A stretch of DNA of 51,720 bases from Octopus bimaculoides (taxonomy: Eukaryota): contig NC_068983.1 of NCBI RefSeq assembly GCF_001194135.2, positions 33,487,569-33,539,288 of the forward strand, in the 5' to 3' direction. Below the pieces are notes generated by a model. It did not search any database. It was not told the DNA's origin and was given only the letters and a program-made list of their open reading frames with translations. A program made the position numbers and the translations under genes. The number at the start of each line of letters is the position of its first letter. Within the stretch, counting starts at the first letter, position 1. Shown in pieces: positions 15,199-50,958 of the stretch.

Positions 15199-16693
15199 TT
15201 GAATTTATTCACAGAACGACTTGAAGTTATTCACAAATAGTAAAGCAGAAATGAACAGCCGAGTGCAGTCTGTGCAGCTTTTCTTCAGTTATATTAAGAT
15301 GGAGTTTGGGCTCTCAGAATGTACTACGATGGTGATGAGACGAAGAAAGCTTGACAGAACAGAAGTCATATGGTTACCAAGTGGTGAAATGACGAAGGCT
15401 ATCGATATCTGGTAACACTTGAGGCAGATGGAATTGAGCCCAACGACGTGAAGGCGAAGACAAAAAGAGAGCACCTGCGGTGAGTAAGAAAAGTATTGAC
15501 TTTAAAGCCTAATGCCAGAAACATAATTTCGGCAATACGCTTAGTCGCAGTAGTTCGGTATGATGCTGGAATCTTGAAGTGAACAGAGGAGAAGCTAAAG
15601 GAGATGGATAAGAGGTCAAGAAAGCTCCTAATGATGCAGAGAGCCCATTATCCACGTGCAAACATCGCCTGTATATGAAGAGAAAAGATGGAAAAGGGGG
15701 ATTGATAAGTGTGAAAAACTACGTATGTATCAAACTCGAGAGCTTAATGAGGTAACTAGCCTAAAGTAAGGAAACCTTGCTAGTGACAGTTAGGAACGAG
15801 GGGATATTGAAAGCAGAGAAGAATGGAAAAAAAGTGGAATAGATATAAAAAGGACATGAAGCAGAATTACGCAACAAGAGATTGCATAATCAATTCCATG
15901 TAGTCACAACGGAAGTTGCTGGAAAACATAGGTGGCGTTGGCTGAAGAAAGGAACATTACTGGCAGCGCAAGACCAAGCTTTGGCTACGAACTAGAGGGT
16001 CAACATTTAGAATGAGCAAGTGTCTCTGCTCTATCTGCAATAGTGTGGACGAAACCATTGCCCATATCACGAACGAATGCCCTAGACTTGCTCAAAACCA
16101 GGACAAGTTGTGTTGACACGATTAGGTAACGAAAGGGTTCACTAGAAACTGTACGAAAAGTGGGGCATAGAGAAAGGTAAGACGTGGTATGAGCACAAAC
16201 CGCAGAGAGTGGCAGAGTTGGAGACTAGCAAAATCCTCTGGGATTTCCCAATCCAAACATCGAGTGCTAGAGCATAACAAACCGGGCCTTGTGGTGGTCG
16301 ACAAGATGCACCACATATGCTATATAGTTGATGTTGTATACTCTTTTGACCTACGAATAATCAAGAAGGAAGACGAAAAAATAGATAGATACAACACTGT
16401 TAAGTATGAAATAGCCCGGCTATAGAAAATAGTGCCAATTATTGTTGAGTCCTTGAAGACAGTATCAGAAAGCATCAAGGGGAATATCAAGGAAATTGGA
16501 ATAGAGTGCCCAGTAGAACTGTTACAAAAAGTTTGCCTCCTTGGTACGGTCAAAATAATCAGGAAAGTATTACATAGTTGAAAACAACGGATAGCATGGT
16601 ACCGTAGGCTGCAGGTAGCAAGCCCGCTACGCATGTAAGACTCTAGGAGCTCCAACAAAATCTGTGATAAAGAGAAATAACAATAATAATAAT
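15199..16693 (+). mobile_element. 5'-truncated RLE-type LINE (R4/Dong-like, second family) within an (AAT)n tract
   Basis: NDLKLF, MEFGLSEC, KRKDGKRGLISV, LAAQDQAL, KILWDFPIQT, NKPGLVVVDK...IVDV...KEDEKIDRY (PD-(D/E)xK RLE), and QKVCLLGTVKIIRKVLHS* (stop 16579-16581). Confidence 0.88.
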
Positions 16694-23215: not shown

Positions 23216-24836
23216 ACAATCATTCCGTCTTAACTAAAACTATTAAACTAAAAATAATAAATATAAACGTGAAAATAGAAGTAATGGAAAAATGAAAAAC
23301 CAAAGAAAACAAACAAACAAAAAACAAACTGTAAACGAAAAAAAATAATTGTCTTCCAAATCTATAATCGAATTTCTTCTCTAGAGCTGGCAACCTATTT
23401 AGTTGCCTGACTTTGATAAACTACATGATTGCCTGTTGAAACATCAAAGAAAAAAAAATGTTTGTTCTGCAAATTGATGGTAAATAGTTTTCTTTGCAGC
23501 TATTTGCTATCGAATTACATTTGGAGAAATGAAACGATAACAAAATACTAAAAATAATAAAAATAAAGCAACAAAGAAAATCAGACATGAGTCGTTGTCA
23601 TTTGTAACACAATCTCTGCCGTCAAAACTATACCCTAAAGGATAACAAAATTGACTTGTTGGATAATGGAGGCATTACAGTGGATCTAAGTGATTTTACT
23701 CGAAAAGAAATTCACTCGTCGAGAATTTAGAAACGGACAGGACAACGTAATTACATAATTGTTTTTCTCCAGTCAACCAAATTTTTCCTTTAACATTACC
23801 CGAGGTTCATTTTACAATATCTTCACGAATATTCAATCAACAATGGTTTGTTTACTTTAAGCATAAATATCCAATGCAAAATTCAGTTTATTTAATTATA
23901 TATTAATTACTTATAGTGAATATCTATTTTTCTTCTTTTTGTGCACATGTTAATAAATTTTGCGAAAATAGTAATTCTGATATGTTTTTTTTTACCCAAC
24001 TTTATATATATCATTTGCTCCAGGGAAAGACAAAACATCTTTTCAAGAAAGTATGATTTTTTTCTAATTTTATGTTCTATTCCAGATTATGATAGAGGCT
24101 TATATTATGACTTCGGATTCATAAAAACGTAGAACGGGTGCGAAACCCGTTTGGCTTTGCTGTCTAGTTTGAAGTATAGCCTAGATTTCTCTCAGATGGA
24201 AAAGAGATATTTTATCCTAAACCATTACTGATAATGTAGGTAATGTAGGCCAAAATAAATAGTTAAATCGTTTAATATCCATTATAAGAACTTTAGTTAA
24301 AATAAAGGAAGGTATATGCGATGTTATCAAATTTTTGTTATTCGGAGATTCATGAGGAACAAAAAAATAATCGACATGGTATACATTCAATCTCATTAAG
24401 TAAGAGTCTTTTGAGGAATAACGAAGATAACAATCGTCTAAATGAATATGTAGTTTTCCTAAGAAGACCACTGCTCAATAGACAGCTTGCAGTCTTTCAG
24501 TTGAAAAACCTTTCAATATCGTCTTAGCCAATAGAATTTAATCAGACGAATGCAAGCGTAAATTTCGAATAAACAACACAAACAATAAAAAAAAACCCAA
24601 ACAATGGAAACAAAAACAGCAGAAACAAAGAATTTCTTTTTGCATGACGTATATAGAAGTGAAGAGGAAAAGGTCACATCTTTCAATACATAGATTCATC
24701 AAATTCTTTTCCATTGATGTAAGAGATTCCTTGAGGCACACTGATTTAACTAATCGGAACTATCAAGCGCTTACACACACAAACACACATACACACAAAC
24801 ATAATTGTGTATACACATATGTACATGTATGTATTA

Positions 24837-24867
<31 letters not shown>

Positions 24868-24996
24868 AGGGCATTACTATACAATAACGCCTCGCGCCAT
24901 GAGGGACTCTAAGGTCAGACTACTATAAAAAAAGCACATTTTTACCGAATGCGAGGAAATGCAACTCTCAAAGCCAATCCCTTAAAAACGAACTAA

Positions 24997-25057
24997 ATTA
25001 TAGATCATGATTTCGTAGTTATTGTAGTATTATACAACTTCTACTCGTCAGTATAAT
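24997..25057 (-). ncRNA. Canonical type I hammerhead ribozyme motif
   Basis: Stem I ATTATA/TATAAT, core CTGACGA (25051-25045), stem II GTAG/CTAC plus GTTGTA/TACAAT, GAAA (25014-25011), palindromic stem III ATCATGAT, AUC triplet with C17 at 25003. Confidence 0.85.
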
Positions 25058-25525
25058 ATGGTCAAGAAAAATAGAAATAAACAGTGAATCAACATACCAA
25101 ACGAACACCATGTATCCAGCATAGCATNNNNNNNNNNNNNNNNNNNNNNNNNNNNNNNNNNNNNNNNNNNNNNNNNNNNNNNNNNNNNNNNNNNNNNNNN
25201 NNNNNNNNNNNNNNNNNNNNNNNNNNNNNNNNNNNNNNNNNNNNNNNNNNNNNNNNNNNNNNNNNNNNNNNNNNNNNNNNNNNNNNNNNNNNNNNNNNNN
25301 NNNNNNNNNNNNNNNNNNNNNNNNNNNNNNNNNNNNNNNNNNNNNNNNNNNNNNNNNNNNNNNNNNNNNNNNNNNNNNNNNNNNNNNNNNNNNNNNNNNN
25401 NNNNNNNNNNNNNNNNNNNNNNNNNNNNNNNNNNNNNNNNNNNNNNNNNNNNNNNNNNNNNNNNNNNNNNNNNNNNNNNNNNNNNNNNNNNNNNNNNNNN
25501 NNNNNNNNNNNNNNNNNNNNNNNNN

Positions 25526-25574
<49 letters not shown>

Positions 25575-25741
25575 GTATATATGTGTGTATATATATATAT
25601 GTGTGTGTATATATATGTATATGTATATTATATATACGTAACTACATATACATATATTCATAAATACACACACACACACACACGCATACACACACACATA
25701 CACACACACATATACATACATATATATTATATCTCTATATA

Positions 25742-26660
25742 TTGGGTTGGCAACTAAGTTCCCGCGTTTTTTTTTTAATTTTGGAATTTATTGCGTTTTT
25801 ACATTTTGGAATCTATTTTTATCGAGAATTCTATTTTTGAATCATTTTGGAATCTCATTTTTTTTTTCTAGTTAAATGTCTTTAATTTTTGTTTATTTTC
25901 AGATCATTAGAATAGAATGTCAAGTTAGGAAAAACGAGCATTTTCGACACCTCCTTCTTTTTGCTTTTAATCAAGGTTCTAAGGCCGCAGAACTGCTCCC
26001 GACATTTGTGCTGTGTATGGAGAGAGTGCCATAGCTGAAAGAACCGCTGGTGATTGGTATGCCAAGTTCAAAAATGGAAATTTTGATCTCAAATGCGCAC
26101 CTCGTTCTGGCTGTCCAGTTGAGTTTGATGAAGAGCGATTAAACCAACTTTTGCATGAAAATTCTCGTCAAACGACAAGGTAAGTGGCAGAGAAAATGGA
26201 ATGCTCCCACACTGCTAGAGAGAAGCATCTTCACTCGATGGGAAAGATTCAGAAGTATGGAGCATGGGTTTCGCATGCTTTAAGTGACAACAGCAAAAAT
26301 CAACGAGGCACAATCTCCGCTGGTTTCCTTGCTCCTCACCGCTCAACTCATGGATACAAGCAACGATTTCTTTACCGAATCGTTACTGGCAACGAAAAAT
26401 GGTGCCTGTACATCAATATGAAGCAGCGTAAGGAATGGCTTAGCCCCGGTAAACAAGCGACACCGCACGTGAAACAAGATCTTCATCCGCGTAAAACAAT
26501 GTTGTGCATATGGTGGGACTGGGAAGGGATTATCCATTACGAATTGCTTGAATGGAACCAAACGGCCAAACCGAAACCCTATGTTCAACAGATGGTACGT
26601 CTCAACACGGCTATTCAAGAGAAAAGACCTAATCGGCAGCATGAAGTTCTTCTGCTGCAC
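25742..26660 (+). mobile_element. Mariner transposon, 5' TIR present, 3' part lost
   Basis: TA followed by TIR ttgggttggcaactaag. Homology ends at VLLLH, just before the second catalytic Asp. Confidence 0.92.
25912..26660 (+). pseudogene. Mariner transposase pseudogene
   Basis: Start is ATA instead of ATG; frameshift near 25990; stop at 26181-26183. Motifs PRSGCP, WVSHAL, VTGNEKW (catalytic D changed to N) and MLCIWWD. Confidence 0.92.
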
Positions 26661-26717
26661 TCCTACGATATGACAACGAGGATCTCAGCTGGGATCCTCT
26701 TCGTCTTAATCGTAGGA
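26661..26717. repeat. 57-bp imperfect palindrome at the mariner breakpoint
   Basis: tcctacgat..gaggatc.cag|ctg.gatcctc..atcgtagga. Confidence 0.8.
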
Positions 26718-27314
26718 CTGCTCCTATTATTATTATATAGGCACCTAAAGCAATCAGTAAAGCATAGCACATGCTACCAGGTCATACGTACGGCTGACAT
26801 ACAATCACATACACACATAAAAGGTCAAGAAAAGTGTGAAGCTAGAGTATTTCTAGAGAAGCACTCGACACGAATACTGAGCTATCAATCACTGTCGGTT
26901 TCTAGGCCAAAGCGAGAATTCCTCAGGTGTAGAAAACTCAAGTTTCATGACGCTTATACCGTAAAGTGGGTGTGGCAAAGAGTAAATAAACCAATGAAAA
27001 GAAGACAAAGAAAATCATTTAACACATCCTTGATGATTCGCTACAATTGTTTCTGTACCAATTCTCTTTGCAACGCTGATTTACGTAAAAATTCGAAATG
27101 AAAATTTACGTAATACTTGCGGTTTTAGACATTAGAAAGGCGTTCCATCAGACTTGCATCAAAGGTATGTTGTCACATTGTGTGTCTTCCAGACGTTGTG
27201 TTTTGGCTTAGATCAGGATGAAACAGAAGAAGGAAGAAAGTAAAAGTGTCGATATACGATAAGTAAGTGAGGTAGAGATCATGAAGGGGGCGGGGATTTA
27301 AGCGCAAGGTTACG

Positions 27315-28843: not shown

Positions 28844-29469
28844 TTGTTTGTCTGTCTGTTTGCCTGTCAGTCTGTCTATCAATCCATATATACAAATAAA
28901 ATGAGTAAGACTATGTGTTAAGGAGTAGACAGACAATAAACAGTATATGAACTTAAAACTACTAAAAAATTGTGGTACGAAAATTACCCCACTATAGACG
29001 CAGACACAGACACACACATAACACACGTGTACACACACACACACGCACACACGCACACACACACATACTCACACATACACACACACACTCATAATCACCC
29101 ACACACATGCAGCATGCATATAATTGTGGTCGGTCTCTTGTGTAATATATCGTCAGACGGCTCGGCAATTGCTTTTTTCTCCGTCATGTCTTGTTCAAGT
29201 CTATTTGTCAAGCTTTAAACACAAATGGATTAACGCGATTAACGATCAGCATGATTAGAGCTATCAAAGCAATCATGCACCACATAATGATCTCGTTTCT
29301 TATAATGAACAACATAATAGGTAATTAGCGAACAAAACTCTTTAGTATAAACTGGATTGTCAAGTATAAAGCGAATTAAATAATTATTCAGATTTATTTA
29401 TTCGTGTCTCGTTAAAAATAACTATATTACGCCCAGTCATAATTTAATACATAACATTTATATATATGC

Positions 29470-29843
29470 AATAATAAATCTCTGAATGAGGTATAAACAG
29501 TAGCTGCACGTCAACGTGAAGTATATTTGCCACTTAAATGCGGCTAACCCCTAAGGGTGAATGCTACTGTAGCTTGTAGAACATCTCCTCCAGCTAGCTA
29601 TTGACAAACCTTCTGTGCCCTGTCAGTATTTGCAAAGGGAAGTCATCCTTCCCATCGTCGATCTGACGTGATACGCACGGACCTGGGTTTCTGGGTATTT
29701 AGCCTTCGTCAGCGCACGACAATCACCGATCTTCAATGCGAAGGGCTCCCAATGAAAATACATATATCTTTTTTGCAGTGACGAAAATTCACAGATCTCA
29801 AACAAGTGTAAACAAGCAATAATAAATCTCTGAACGAGATAAG
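29470..29843 (-). mobile_element. Retrozyme-like or solo-pLTR retroposed element with terminal direct repeat and 15-bp TSD
   Basis: TSD catttatatatatgc at 29455-29469 and 29844-29858. Repeat gcaataataaatctctgaa(t/c)gag at 29468-29490 and 29816-29838 (period 348). Internal hammerhead-like motif. Confidence 0.75.
29674..29718 (-). ncRNA. Type I hammerhead-like motif with irregular stem II junction
   Basis: CGTGCG-CTGACGA-AGGCTAAATACCCA-GAAA-CCCAGG-TC-CGTGCG. GUC triplet with C17 at 29680; stem I is 6 bp with two G-U pairs. Confidence 0.65.
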
Positions 29844-29949
29844 CATTTATATATATGCTTTTACTAGTATGATTTTCAGCATTATTTATGGGTTCTAAAT
29901 CTTAATGTGTTGACGTAGCCTACTACTTCCCATTCAGAAAGTAGGGAGA

Positions 29950-30291
29950 GTGACCCCCTTCGGTCATGAATGAATATGAGATTGCACCTAGAAAGTTACC
30001 TTCCAAGGCAAAAATCCGAGCAAGGTTGTTTATGGAAGACCAGCAGTCGCCCATGCATAACAGCCTCCCATCTCCACACCAACGATGTTATCCAAGGGAA
30101 AGGCAAAGACTGGGACAGCTTGGCTCCAGTGACATCGCAGCTCATTTCTACGTCCAGAGTGAAGTGGAGCAACGTGAAATAAAGTGTCTTGCTCAACAAC
30201 ACAACACGCAGCCCGGTCCGGAAATCGAACTCACAGCTTCACGATCGTAAACTCGACGCGTCGATGCGTTAACCACTGAGCCATGCGCCTT
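29950..30291 (-). mobile_element. tRNA-derived SINE
   Basis: A-box TGGCTCAGTGG and B-box GAGTTCGATTTCC; core shared with 11510-11815, different tail. Confidence 0.85.
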
Positions 30292-47262: not shown

Positions 47263-47724
47263 GTGAGGAAGTGTGAGAAAACAGAGAGCACATCGACCGT
47301 GTAATTGCTCGGTGCTTTATGTATTGACCACGGTATAGTGAGAGACAGTTATCATTTGGTGAGATTTGAACTGAATGCAAACACGAACAGCAAAGAACCC
47401 AAATGATTCATTTTGACATCCTAACGACTCCGCTAACTCACCGCACCAACGCTGGAAGTATGTTTAAGCATATACACATATGAACTTATGTGTAGGTTTA
47501 AATATGCAAGAATCTTGTTTTGCTTCTGTCATTAGTCATCAGTCATGCTGGTGCAACACCTTGAAAAACTTCAGTGGAACGAATCGACTCCAATAATTAG
47601 TTTTCATGTTTTTTTAAGCCTGGTACTTATTCTATCCGTGTCTTTTGTCGAACTGCCAAGTTACGGGCACATAAACACATCAACATCGGTTGTCAAGAGA
47701 TCTGAGACAAATGGTAATGAGTGT

Positions 47725-47768
47725 ATATGCCATATTTCGTGGGGTCTTGCCCCTTCATCAGTAAAACA
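47725..47768 (-). ncRNA. Partial hammerhead-like motif
   Basis: CTGATGA-A-GGGG(CAAGA)CCCC-AC-GAAA-TATG; stem I is not formed and position 17 is G. Confidence 0.35.
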
Positions 47769-49836: not shown

Positions 49837-50958
49837 GTTTTGTCCGAATTTTGAATAAAGAAAACAAGTGATCAAATGTTATATTTAATTGGAATTTAAT
49901 CATCAATATACTTTCCCTGATTATCTATGACTTCCTTTTCAAAGCGAAGAACTCTGAAATGTCAGTTTCGATCTCCTCCTGGCTTGTGAAAGTTATGTCC
50001 CCCCAAATGATTCTGTAAACTACGAAACAAATGGTAGTCTGAAGCAGCTAGGTCGGGAGAATAAAGTGGATGAGGAATTCTTTCCCAACCAAGCTTTTCG
50101 ATCTTCTGTGATGTGATCTTTGCACTGTGGGGTCACGCATTGTCCTGATGAAACATCACTCCTTTTCGATTCATTAAAGCGGGTCTTCTTTTCTTTAAAG
50201 CTTGGTTCAAACACCCTAATTGCTGACAGTAGATTTTTGCATTGATTGTTGCATTAGGTGGTAACAATTCAAAGTGAATTACTCCTTTGCAATCCCACTA
50301 GATAGAGAGAAGAACCTTTTTCCCATGAAGTTCCCTTCTCGGTTGTGGTTGAGCTTTTTCCCTTTTACCAAGCCACTGTTTACGACGTTTAACATTTCGA
50401 TAGAAGATCCATTTTTCGTCACTAGTCACAAGTCTAACCAAAATGGGTGAAATGAGTTCGCGAGAATGGAGAGAAGAGCAGATGTCAACTCAGGATTTGC
50501 GGTTGCTTTCGGACAATTTATGAGGCACCCATTTTCAAGGAGTTTATTATCAAACTGAACTGGACGTCCTGTTCGATCTTCATCTTTAAGGCTGAAATCT
50601 CCACTTCTGAATTTTGCAAACCATCTTCTGCAAGTTCTTTCATTCAAGCATTCTTTTCCATACACTGAATGTATGTTTCGAGTCGCTTTTGCTGCAGAGT
50701 TTCCTTTTTTGTATTCATAAAGCATTATGTGCCACAAATGTTCTTTGGATATTTCCATGTTAGAAAAGGTTTTAATCAAAGAAATTTTAATTCTATTATT
50801 CTGTTATTCTATTATTCTGTAAAATAATATAAAATTAGTTTAAATGTACCCAAATGCATAAAAATAAGTTTTAATTCCATTAGGCATTCTAAAATACTAT
50901 TAAATTTCATTCAATTTTAACGAAGGTAAAATCGGACAGAACTTATGGGATGACTTGA
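49837..50958 (-). mobile_element. Mariner transposon (second family), 5' TIR intact, 3' TIR partial
   Basis: TA plus TIR tcaagtcatcccataagttctgtccgatttt at 50958; only the inner aaaattcggacaaaac remains at 49852-49837. Confidence 0.92.
49896..50758 (-). pseudogene. DD34D mariner transposase pseudogene with internal deletions
   Basis: MEISKEHLWHIML..., WVPHKL, VTSDEKW, HQDNA*PH and YSPDLAASDYHLF. The second HTH is deleted near 50535 and there are three in-frame stops. Confidence 0.92.

What the first reader, a model, noticed from the sequence alone, without database searches (positions are those of the whole stretch)
29455..29858. Retrozyme-like element: 348-bp unit, terminal redundancy, hammerhead and perfect 15-bp TSD
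Seen: a non-coding 374-bp insertion between two exact copies of catttatatatatgc, a 23-bp terminal direct repeat with period 348, and a central minus-strand hammerhead-like motif with a GUC site. Established: non-LTR retrozymes and Penelope pLTRs carry type I hammerheads, and retrozymes form 170-400 nt circular RNAs. Inference: this is what slightly more than one round of reverse transcription around a 348-nt circle, followed by target-primed integration, would leave. It would be a small ribozyme-driven parasite borrowing a LINE or Penelope enzyme. I do not know whether this family has been described.
Basis: partly seen in the sequence, partly recalled or inferred. Interest (0 to 1): 0.85.

Follow-up and report, generated by a model that had tools for sequence, protein, structure and literature searches.

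The report
Retrozyme-like insertion with decayed hammerhead
A 374-bp non-coding retroelement sits in an octopus genome, copied slightly more than once around a 348-bp unit and carrying a worn hammerhead ribozyme motif; it looks like a probably dead single copy of a kind of element already described in other animals.

Summary
The sequence features are real. Exact 15-bp repeats (29455-69 and 29844-58) flank a 374-bp non-coding insert. The ends of the insert repeat each other with period 348 (24 bp, 22/24 identical; 26 bp if a shared GC is counted).

The minus strand carries every hammerhead core nucleotide: CUGACGA, GAAA and GUC, with cleavage predicted between 29680 and 29679. Helix I has 6 bp. 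The GAAAC-N4-GUC helix III has the same layout as the self-cleaving mussel and coral retrozyme ribozymes.

Helix II is defective: A10.1 faces A11.1 and only 2 bp can form. Rfam gives no hammerhead hit even when only 86 nt are searched. The hammerhead fold (-7.6 kcal/mol) loses to another fold (-15.9).

No second copy was found in about 115 kb of window plus fetched loci, about 94 kb of it octopus, or in any collection I could search. So circular permutation, tandem arrays and family conservation remain untested.

The window is octopus DNA, and octopus genomes hold Penelope-like elements.

Best reading: a monomeric non-LTR retrozyme or Penelope-dependent element, made from a longer-than-unit template (a circle or a tandem transcript). 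It is a new member of a known kind and of modest interest.

The parts
29455..29469 (.). Left copy of the 15-bp target-site duplication, CATTTATATATATGC. It contains a short (TA)n run.
   Evidence: Exact repeat; chance estimate.
29844..29858 (.). Right copy of the 15-bp target-site duplication.
   Evidence: Exact repeat.
29470..29843 (-). The 374-bp non-coding insertion: one full 348-bp unit plus 24 bp of the next unit plus 2 extra bases. The strand given is the sense of the hammerhead-like motif.
   Evidence: The 348-bp unit has 43.7% GC. No Pfam hit or homologue. No tRNA, 5S, 7SL or snRNA match.
29470..29493 (.). Left copy of the terminal redundancy, AATAATAAATCTCTGAATGAGGTA. The preceding GC (29468-69) belongs to the target-site duplication and also matches the unit, giving a 2-nt microhomology at the junction.
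   Evidence: (family D3).
29818..29841 (.). Right copy of the terminal redundancy, AATAATAAATCTCTGAACGAGATA, 348 bp from the left copy. They are 22/24 identical. Both differences are transitions, one at a CpG.
29842..29843 (.). Two bases (AG) between the redundancy and the right target-site duplication that do not match the unit. They are either untemplated junction bases or diverged unit sequence.
   Evidence: Read directly.
29668..29726 (-). Hammerhead-like motif (type I layout). Helix I outer part: GUGA 29726-23 with UCAC 29671-68. Helix I: CGUGCG 29718-13 with CGUGCG 29679-74 (6 bp, 2 of them G.U). Core CUGACGA 29712-06. Helix II and loop AGGC-UAAAUA-CCCA 29705-29692 (only 2 bp; A10.1 faces A11.1). 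GAA 29691-89. Helix III ACCCAGGU 29688-81. C17 at 29680, with predicted cleavage between 29680 and 29679.
   Evidence: descriptor scan, simulations, published positive controls; no Rfam hammerhead hit; hammerhead fold -7.6 kcal/mol against a minimum free energy of -15.9.

Best explanation
This is a retrotransposed, non-autonomous, non-coding element of the metazoan non-LTR retrozyme type, a relative of the pLTR of Penelope-like elements (PLEs), in an octopus genome.

Proposed steps:
1. An RNA of minus-strand sense carrying a type I hammerhead was reverse-transcribed at a nicked (TA)n-containing target. Priming may have used a 2-nt GC microhomology.
2. The reverse transcriptase copied 348 + 24 nt of a template longer than one unit. 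That template was either a circularised monomer or a head-to-tail multimeric transcript.
3. Second-strand repair produced the 15-bp target-site duplication.

The enzyme was supplied in trans, most likely by a PLE and possibly by a LINE.

The result holds a single ribozyme. In this copy helix II is broken, so the insertion is most likely a dead monomeric offspring copy and not an active source of circular RNA.

Shown: the insertion anatomy, the redundancy, the presence of all hammerhead core nucleotides and the helix I and III layout, and the absence of coding capacity and of a pol III SINE head.

Inferred: the RNA sense, target-primed reverse transcription, the PLE partner, a circle versus a multimer, and loss of activity.
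For: Anatomy:
- Exact 15-bp target-site duplication and nested terminal redundancy of period 348.
- Unit GC of 43.7% against 35.6% for the 2-kb bin that contains it.

Hammerhead:
- A motif with this core, a 6-bp helix I and a helix III like this one is expected 0.003 times per 50 kb in simulations. The window has it inside the insertion.
- It has the same helix I length and the same GAAAC-N4-GUC layout as the self-cleaving mussel Mg353 retrozyme hammerhead. Its 14-nt helix II plus loop spans the same length as the Rfam consensus.
- Helix III (ACCCAGGU) is one CG-to-CA transition away from a perfect palindrome. Canonical metazoan hammerheads have such a palindrome (PMC4209133).

Class features from PMC7229834: units of 150-450 bp (mussel 350-390), low GC, no LTR/PBS/PPT, and target-site duplications longer than 4 bp.

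Known precedents:
- Monomeric derivative copies are a recognised category (bioRxiv 10.64898/2026.07.22.740005).
- PLE insertions form partial tandems and 30-40-bp tails, and in Naiads prefer (TA)n targets (PMC8557442).

Genome context:
- The window is octopus DNA.
- Octopus genomes contain Penelope-like elements, some recently active (PMC13282606, PMC8967140).
- A second motif in the window, at 25057-24997(-), scores 24.8 bits, E 1.9e-4, full length against Rfam Hammerhead_1. Hammerhead-bearing elements therefore exist in this genome.

Not a classical SINE: no tRNA, 5S, 7SL or snRNA-like head.
Against: - Rfam finds no hammerhead at the site, even at E<=10 on 86 nt.
- The conserved G10.1-C11.1 pair is replaced by A.A, and helix II has only 2 bp.
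- The hammerhead fold is 8 kcal/mol worse than the minimum free energy fold.
- The local fold is no more stable than shuffles (z +1.1). The circular unit is only weakly structured (z -1.4), whereas published retrozyme circles are described as highly self-paired.
- Only 1.07 units and one ribozyme are present, not the tandem that defines active retrozymes.
- Only one copy was seen in about 115 kb of window plus fetched loci (about 94 kb of it octopus), so family membership, conservation of the ribozyme and permuted ends are untested.
- No reverse transcriptase or GIY-YIG ORF is in the window.
- My relaxed hammerhead descriptor was fitted after seeing the motif.
Confidence: 0.55

Rival explanations
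1. It is an ordinary SINE-like or otherwise non-autonomous retroposon, or a heavily truncated piece of a longer element, mobilised by a LINE (RTE, CR1, Dong-R4) or a PLE. In this reading the hammerhead-like motif is fortuitous or a long-dead relic with no role. The 24-bp redundancy is a template-switch product or a PLE-type 'tail' with fixed ends, and no circular RNA is involved.
For: - There is no Rfam hammerhead hit, helix II is broken, and the hammerhead fold is not favoured.
- The minus-sense 3' end, ...GATTTATTATT, resembles the short-repeat tails of LINE-dependent SINEs (my own knowledge, a lead only).
- A 15-bp target-site duplication fits any target-primed reverse transcription.
- Octopus genomes hold about 900 unclassified SINE families (PMC13282606).
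- PLE tails of 30-40 bp at one end are routine (PMC8557442).
- The insertion ends lie 210 nt from the predicted cleavage site.
Against: - A chance hammerhead motif of this quality within 374 bp has a probability of about 2e-5 to 6e-4.
- There is no tRNA, 5S or 7SL head.
- The helix I and III layout matches proven retrozyme ribozymes.
- The redundancy spans the whole unit period, as in head-to-tail copies.
Confidence: 0.33
2. It is not a mobile element. The arrangement would then be templated filler DNA captured during double-strand-break repair, a local duplication, or an assembly artefact of a draft genome that happens to create the flanking and terminal repeats.
For: - The assembly is a draft with many N gaps.
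- Only one copy was seen.
- The flanking repeat is AT-rich with a (TA)n core.
Against: - There is no gap or N next to the element.
- The two nested, abutting exact repeats are far beyond chance.
- The insert has foreign base composition and contains a hammerhead-like core.
- This anatomy is the classic signature of target-primed insertion.
Confidence: 0.07

Closest known systems
Metazoan non-LTR retrozymes (Cervera & de la Pena 2020, PMC7229834), for example mussel Mg353 and coral Amil224
   Same: - Non-coding unit of about 350 bp (mussel 350-390 bp) with GC below 45%.
- No LTR, PBS or PPT, and a target-site duplication longer than 4 bp.
- Type I hammerhead layout with a 6-bp helix I and GAAAC-N4-GUC.
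- Head-to-tail redundancy that implies a longer-than-unit template.
- Co-occurrence with PLEs in the host genome.
   Different: - Only 1.07 units and one ribozyme are present, not dimers or multimers.
- Helix II lacks the 10.1-11.1 pair and has 2 bp instead of 4.
- Rfam gives no match.
- Predicted self-pairing of the circle is weak (z -1.4).
- There is no sequence similarity to the mussel or coral units beyond the core.
- Expression as a circle is not known.
pLTRs, partial tandems and 'tails' of Penelope-like elements with minimal hammerheads (PMC4209133, PMC8557442)
   Same: - A full copy preceded by a truncated copy.
- A short terminal extension.
- Insertion at a (TA)n-containing target, with a variable and fairly long target-site duplication.
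- A type I hammerhead with a short, near-palindromic helix III.
   Different: - The unit is 348 bp with no RT or GIY-YIG ORF, so it is not a PLE itself.
- The redundancy is 24-26 bp, just under the 30-40 bp quoted for tails.
- PLE minimal hammerheads keep G10.1-C11.1 and usually have a long helix II (6-8 bp). This motif has neither.
Monomeric retrozyme derivatives in vertebrates (Li, Clavereau & Pollet 2026, bioRxiv 10.64898/2026.07.22.740005)
   Same: Dispersed single-unit copies of retrozyme families, interpreted as offspring that can no longer transpose, with an origin in PLE pLTRs.
   Different: - Those were described for vertebrates plus a few outgroups, not cephalopods.
- There, family membership was established from many copies. 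Here only one copy is available.
Classical SINEs (tRNA-Core and tRNA-Deu SINEs dominate octopus genomes, PMC8967140)
   Same: Short, non-coding, with a target-site duplication of 10-20 bp, and mobilised in trans by a retrotransposon enzyme.
   Different: - No pol III head: ARAGORN and Rfam are negative.
- No A-rich or clear microsatellite tail.
- Terminal redundancy and a hammerhead-like core are present.

Membership tests
Hammerhead ribozyme, type I (Rfam RF00163; canonical metazoan form) | Conserved catalytic core: C3-U4-G5-A6-N7-G8-A9, G12-A13-A14, the A15.1-U16.1 pair, and H17 at the cleavage site | tested here: met
   CUGACGA at 29712-06, GAA at 29691-89, A15.1 at 29688 paired with U16.1 at 29681, and C17 at 29680.
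Hammerhead ribozyme, type I (Rfam RF00163; canonical metazoan form) | Helix I of about 6 bp, closing directly on the core and open-ended (type I) | tested here: met
   CGUGCG pairs with CGUGCG for 6 bp (2 of them G.U). After an internal loop, GUGA pairs with UCAC. By chance, 6 contiguous pairs in this register have a probability of about 0.003.
Hammerhead ribozyme, type I (Rfam RF00163; canonical metazoan form) | Helix II of about 4 bp, closed by the highly conserved G10.1-C11.1 pair | tested here: not met
   The segment is AGGC-UAAAUA-CCCA. A10.1 faces A11.1, and only G10.2-C11.2 and G10.3-C11.3 can pair. The mussel and coral controls have 4 bp.
Hammerhead ribozyme, type I (Rfam RF00163; canonical metazoan form) | Short helix III with a palindromic loop, which allows the dimeric active form | tested here: inconclusive
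   ACCCAGGU has the right length and position (as in mussel ACGCGCGU) but is not a palindrome. It is one CG-to-CA change away from ACCCGGGU.
Hammerhead ribozyme, type I (Rfam RF00163; canonical metazoan form) | Match to the Rfam covariance model | tested here: not met
   There is no hammerhead hit at E<=10 on 701 nt or on 86 nt. With the same kind of search, the motif at 25057-24997(-) scores 24.8 bits.
Hammerhead ribozyme, type I (Rfam RF00163; canonical metazoan form) | Self-cleavage | not testable with these tools
   This needs in vitro transcription of monomer and dimer constructs.
Metazoan non-LTR retrozyme (PMC7229834) | Tandem head-to-tail repeats (dimer or larger) of a 150-450-bp unit, each with a hammerhead | tested here: not met
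   Only 1.07 units and one hammerhead-like motif are present. No other copy is in the window or in L001-L003. The unit length of 348 bp is in range.
Metazoan non-LTR retrozyme (PMC7229834) | Non-coding, low GC (below 45-50%), and no LTR, PBS or PPT | tested here: met
   GC is 43.7%. The ORFs have no family or homologue. There are no long terminal repeats.
Metazoan non-LTR retrozyme (PMC7229834) | Target-site duplication longer than the 4 bp of plant retrozymes, when one is present | tested here: met
   An exact 15-bp duplication.
Metazoan non-LTR retrozyme (PMC7229834) | Expressed as abundant, highly self-paired circular RNA | tested here: inconclusive
   Expression cannot be tested here. The predicted circular fold is -93.5 kcal/mol, only z = -1.4 against shuffles.
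Metazoan non-LTR retrozyme (PMC7229834) | Multicopy family in a genome that also carries PLEs | tested here: inconclusive
   PLEs are reported in octopus genomes. No other copy of this unit could be retrieved: searches gave no hits, searches found no homologues, and the two hits proved spurious.
Penelope-like element insertion style (PMC8557442) | Partial tandem or short terminal 'tail', target-site duplication, and (in Naiads) (TA)n target preference | tested here: met
   There is a 24-26-bp terminal redundancy, and the 15-bp duplication contains (TA)4-5. The quoted tail length is 30-40 bp, so the fit is approximate.
Penelope-like element insertion style (PMC8557442) | RT plus GIY-YIG endonuclease ORF (an autonomous element) | tested here: not met
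   No such domain is in the element or anywhere in the window. Of 147 ORFs, only mariner domains and one marginal REC102 hit (E 4e-4) were found.
Classical SINE | Pol III head derived from tRNA, 5S or 7SL | tested here: not met
   ARAGORN finds no tRNA. Rfam at E<=10 finds no tRNA, 5S, 7SL or snRNA in 29300-30000.

The most novel reading that the evidence does not exclude
This copy may be a relic of a so far undescribed cephalopod retrozyme family. Elsewhere in octopus genomes that family would exist as tandem arrays with an intact type I hammerhead, perhaps an unusual one with an A-U pair at 10.1-11.1, as the related-looking motif at 858-806(-) hints. It would be expressed as roughly 348-nt circular RNAs mobilised by the Penelope-like elements that are still active in octopus, and it would currently be hidden among the roughly 900 'unclassified SINE' families.
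Probability: 0.25. Interest if true: 0.45.

Novelty: new member of a known kind. Interest (0 to 1): 0.3.

Why it matters
If the family proves real, it would extend non-LTR retrozymes (circular-RNA-forming, ribozyme-bearing parasites of Penelope-like elements) to cephalopods. Cephalopod genomes are unusually rich in unclassified short retroelements. The family would also give a handle for reclassifying some of the 'unclassified SINEs'.

A single insertion with clean junctions has its own use. The 2-nt microhomology at one junction, 2 extra bases at the other, and a copy 1.07 units long illustrate how such templates are primed and copied.

As it stands, this is one decayed copy of a published class. 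It does not open a new question.

Tried and rejected
1. Rfam. The whole window at gathering thresholds gave nothing. The permissive search returned only microsatellite-driven miRNA noise. The weak snoR66 match at 29745-29823 (20.7 bits against a threshold of 43) was dismissed.

2. Other copies of the unit.
- blastn within the window and against fetched loci and nhmmer found none.
- A transition-tolerant hammerhead pattern gave 0 hits in JGI metagenome contigs and in IMG/VR.
- A back-translated search of metagenome contigs gave no confirmed hit.

3. ORF trick. I searched the element's 60-aa and 58-aa reading frames in the protein collections, hoping to catch ORFs called on other copies.
- No candidates were found.
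- The exhaustive HMMER search gave two hits, P0121 and P0122. They looked like tandem arrays but are unrelated repeat proteins whose scores add up over repeats.
- Their DNA (L004, L005) has no similarity to the unit and no hammerhead-core motif within the repeat ORFs.

4. Autonomous partner in the window. Pfam on 147 stop-to-stop ORFs found only mariner domains plus one marginal REC102 hit (E 4e-4).

5. Homology to published retrozymes. Local alignment to mussel Mg353 and coral Amil224 showed nothing beyond the ribozyme core.

6. Homology to the other hammerhead-like sites in the window. The site at 858 gave a marginal alignment (z 1.9; 11 of 200 shuffles reached it). The sites at 25051 and 47761 gave none.

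7. tRNA-derived SINE. Rejected.

8. The CUGAUGA site at 47761(-). It lies next to a repeat shared with Octopus bimaculoides locus L001, which I recognise from memory as a common octopus SINE. It fails the helix criteria.

9. The 15-mer repeat pair at 23247 and 23547. It is A-rich low complexity and was not pursued.

Full report
**Observation**

- CATTTATATATATGC occurs at 29455-29469 and again at 29844-29858, with 374 bp (29470-29843) between the copies.
- The two ends of the 374 bp repeat each other with a period of 348 bp. GCAATAATAAATCTCTGAA(T/C)GAG(G/A)TA lies at 29468-29493 and 29816-29841. It has a 19-bp exact core and is 24/26 identical. Inside the insert proper it is 24 bp, 22/24 identical.
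- The leading GC of the left copy belongs to the flanking repeat. This makes a 2-nt microhomology between target and element at that junction.
- At the other junction, two bases (AG, 29842-43) match neither the unit nor the target.

Chance does not explain this.
- In 200 first-order Markov simulations of the window, an exact 15-mer pair 100-1000 bp apart is expected 0.115 times per 50 kb, and a 19-mer pair 0.005 times.
- Here the two repeats are nested and abut. They are among only about four non-low-complexity repeat loci of this kind in the real window.

The unit has 43.7% GC, against 35.6% for the 2-kb bin that contains it. This is a bona fide insertion with a 15-bp target-site duplication. 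It contains 1.07 copies of a 348-bp unit.

**Coding capacity and RNA families**

- The longest ORF is 60 aa. It has no Pfam hit and no homologue.
- ARAGORN finds no tRNA.
- Rfam at E<=10 on 29300-30000 finds no tRNA, 5S, 7SL or snRNA, and no ribozyme.
- The element is therefore not a classical pol III SINE.

**The hammerhead-like motif**

On the minus strand the sequence is:

GUGA-UUGU-CGUGCG-CUGACGA-AGGC-UAAAUA-CCCA-GAA-ACCCAGGU-C^CGUGCG-UA-UCAC (29726 to 29668)

What is present:
- All invariant core nucleotides are there.
- Helix I has 6 contiguous pairs (two are G.U), followed by an internal loop and 4 more pairs.
- Helix III is A-U and C-G around a 4-nt loop.

I wrote a descriptor scan and ran it on the window and on simulations.
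- A motif at least as good as this one is expected 0.003 times per 50 kb on both strands. 'As good' means the core, helix I of 6 bp or more, helix III of 3 positions or more, and helix II of 2 bp or more allowing a mismatched closing pair.
- That is about 2e-5 for a 374-bp insert. A laxer descriptor gives 0.08 per window.
- The criteria were fitted after seeing the motif. Even so, the 6-bp helix I in the exact register (probability about 0.003) is an independent confirmation.

Positive controls came from the supplement of PMC7229834. They are the self-cleaving mussel Mg353 and coral Amil224 retrozyme hammerheads.
- Both have helix I of 6 bp, helix II of 4 bp, and GAAAC-N4 or N6-GUC.
- The octopus motif shares the helix I length and the mussel-type GAAAC-N4-GUC.
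- Its 14-nt helix II plus loop is the same length as in the Rfam consensus shown.

What is wrong is helix II.
- A10.1 faces A11.1 where G-C is highly conserved (PMC4209133).
- Only two internal G-C pairs can form.

Consequences:
- Rfam reports no hammerhead, even when only 86 nt are searched.
- The same kind of search gives 24.8 bits, E 1.9e-4, full length, for another motif in the window at 25057-24997(-).
- The hammerhead fold of the focal motif is -7.6 kcal/mol, against -15.9 for the minimum free energy fold. In that fold the CUGACG box pairs with a downstream CGUCAG.
- The local region is no more stable than shuffles (z +1.1).

I conclude that the motif derives from a hammerhead, but in this copy it is probably inactive or very weak.

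Helix III (ACCCAGGU) is one CpG-decay step from the perfect palindrome ACCCGGGU. That is the form expected for hammerheads that act as dimers.

**Age (inference)**

- The two redundant ends differ by two transitions in 24 bp, one at a CpG. The 15-bp flanks are identical.
- This suggests modest post-insertion decay, a few percent, or very roughly a few to about 25 million years on the scale used in PMC13282606.
- That predicts only one or two substitutions in the 59-nt ribozyme region. So some of the helix II defects may already have been present in the source copy, or they may be native to the family.

**Genomic context**

The window is eukaryotic. It is rich in microsatellites and has assembly gaps.
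- Its mariner remnant (about 25730-27100) is 88% identical over 930 bp to a copy in Octopus bimaculoides GCA_001194135.2.
- Several short repeat families are shared with two O. bimaculoides loci. The window therefore comes from this or a closely related octopus.
- Pfam on 147 ORFs finds only mariner domains plus one marginal REC102 hit (E 4e-4). There is no reverse transcriptase or GIY-YIG nuclease in the window.

The literature places Penelope-like elements in octopus genomes, with 30 Penelope families recently active in O. vulgaris, alongside about 900 unclassified SINE families. None of the octopus repeat papers I read mentions hammerheads or retrozymes. The retrozyme papers do not mention cephalopods.

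**Search for other copies**

None was found.
- There is no second copy in the window or in about 63 kb of fetched loci, about 43 kb of it octopus.
- There are none in JGI metagenome contigs or IMG/VR.
- The element's ORFs have no relatives in the protein collections.
- The two HMMER hits were unrelated tandem-repeat proteins.

The tools here hold no cephalopod genome that can be searched by DNA. The decisive family-level tests (permuted ends, arrays, covariation) therefore could not be run.

**Mechanism**

Insertion by target-primed reverse transcription of a template longer than one unit explains every feature:
- a target-site duplication of LINE or PLE length at a (TA)n-containing site;
- GC microhomology at one junction and two extra bases at the other;
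- a copy length of 348 + 24 nt.

The insertion ends lie 210 nt from the predicted cleavage site. The template was therefore not the linear self-cleaved monomer. It was a circularised monomer, an uncleaved head-to-tail transcript, or a linear element with fixed ends plus a PLE-type tail.

PLE insertions routinely show a full copy preceded by a truncated one, 30-40-bp tails and, in Naiads, (TA)n targets (PMC8557442). Animal retrozymes have been argued to be non-autonomous derivatives of PLE pLTRs, with dispersed monomers as dead offspring.

The data cannot separate a circle from a multimer. The two differences between the redundant ends are compatible with either.

**Comparison and verdict**

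- In how it works, the element resembles a metazoan non-LTR retrozyme or PLE-dependent element.
- As for membership, it meets the unit size, GC, non-coding nature, target-site duplication and hammerhead-core criteria.
- It fails the tandem-array criterion, the helix II criterion and the Rfam criterion. Expression and family criteria are untested.
- The fair label is a monomeric, probably dead, retrozyme-like insertion, a new member of a known kind if a family is confirmed.
- Interest is modest.

Noticed in passing
window 24997-25057 (-), context 24830-25127: A much better hammerhead: AUUAUA-CUGACGA-GUAG...CUAC-GAAA-UCAUGAU-C^UAUAAU. It has a 6-bp helix I, a canonical G10.1-C11.1 pair, and a perfectly palindromic helix III (AUCAUGAU). 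It scores 24.8 bits, E 1.9e-4, full length against Rfam Hammerhead_1, below the gathering score of 34. It lies about 130 nt upstream of the end of a repeat (24848-24989) that also occurs, 5'-truncated and without the ribozyme, in Octopus bimaculoides locus L002. The whole stretch sits between (TA)n tracts and next to an assembly gap (25128 onwards). It looks like the 3' end or pLTR of a Penelope-like element.
   Followed up: partly
window 806-858 (-): A third, weaker hammerhead-like motif: CUGAUGA-AGU-CUAAAUAAU-ACU-GAAA, with a 4-bp helix I. Its 5' half resembles the focal motif, sharing CUGAYGAAGKCUAAAUA and the upstream UGAAG..GUGAU. The alignment is marginal (z 1.9; 11 of 200 shuffles reached it). 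It has an A-U pair at 10.1-11.1, which hints that A10.1 may be native to a local hammerhead lineage. All three motifs are on the minus strand.
   Followed up: partly
window about 25730-27101 (+) and 50426-50803 (-): Decayed mariner/Mos1 transposase remnants with HTH_48 and Transposase_1 domains. The first is 88% identical in DNA to copies in Octopus bimaculoides chromosomes, which identifies the window as octopus.
   Followed up: yes
window 47611-47701, 5515-5721, 11158-11299, 7266-7423: Short interspersed repeats shared at 72-88% identity with O. bimaculoides loci L001 and L002. The one at 47611-47701 looks, from memory, like the abundant tRNA-related octopus SINE. A CUGAUGA...GAAA string directly upstream of it (47761-47704, -) fails the helix criteria and is not a hammerhead.
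   Followed up: partly
window 29387-29404 and 29875-29889: Both flanks of the insertion carry AT-rich strings that resemble the reverse complement of the element's terminal motif (TTCAGAGATTTATTATT): TTCAGATTTATTTATT upstream and TTCAGCATTATTTAT downstream. This is probably AT-rich coincidence. It could conceivably be a trace of an older inverted fragment, as seen next to Penelope-like insertions (families D5 and I1).
   Followed up: no
loci L004 (3501-5180) and L005 (10001-18520): Two unrelated metagenome contigs carry long ORFs that run through tandem DNA repeats of about 243 bp and about 97 bp. They surfaced as false positives because HMMER sums scores over repeated stretches.
   Followed up: yes
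window 16171-16422 (+): A 78-aa ORF contains ...NKPGLVVVDK...IVDVV..FD.RI.KKE.EK..RY...KYEI. From memory this resembles the C-terminal tail seen in some invertebrate retrotransposon proteins. It has no Pfam hit.
   Followed up: no
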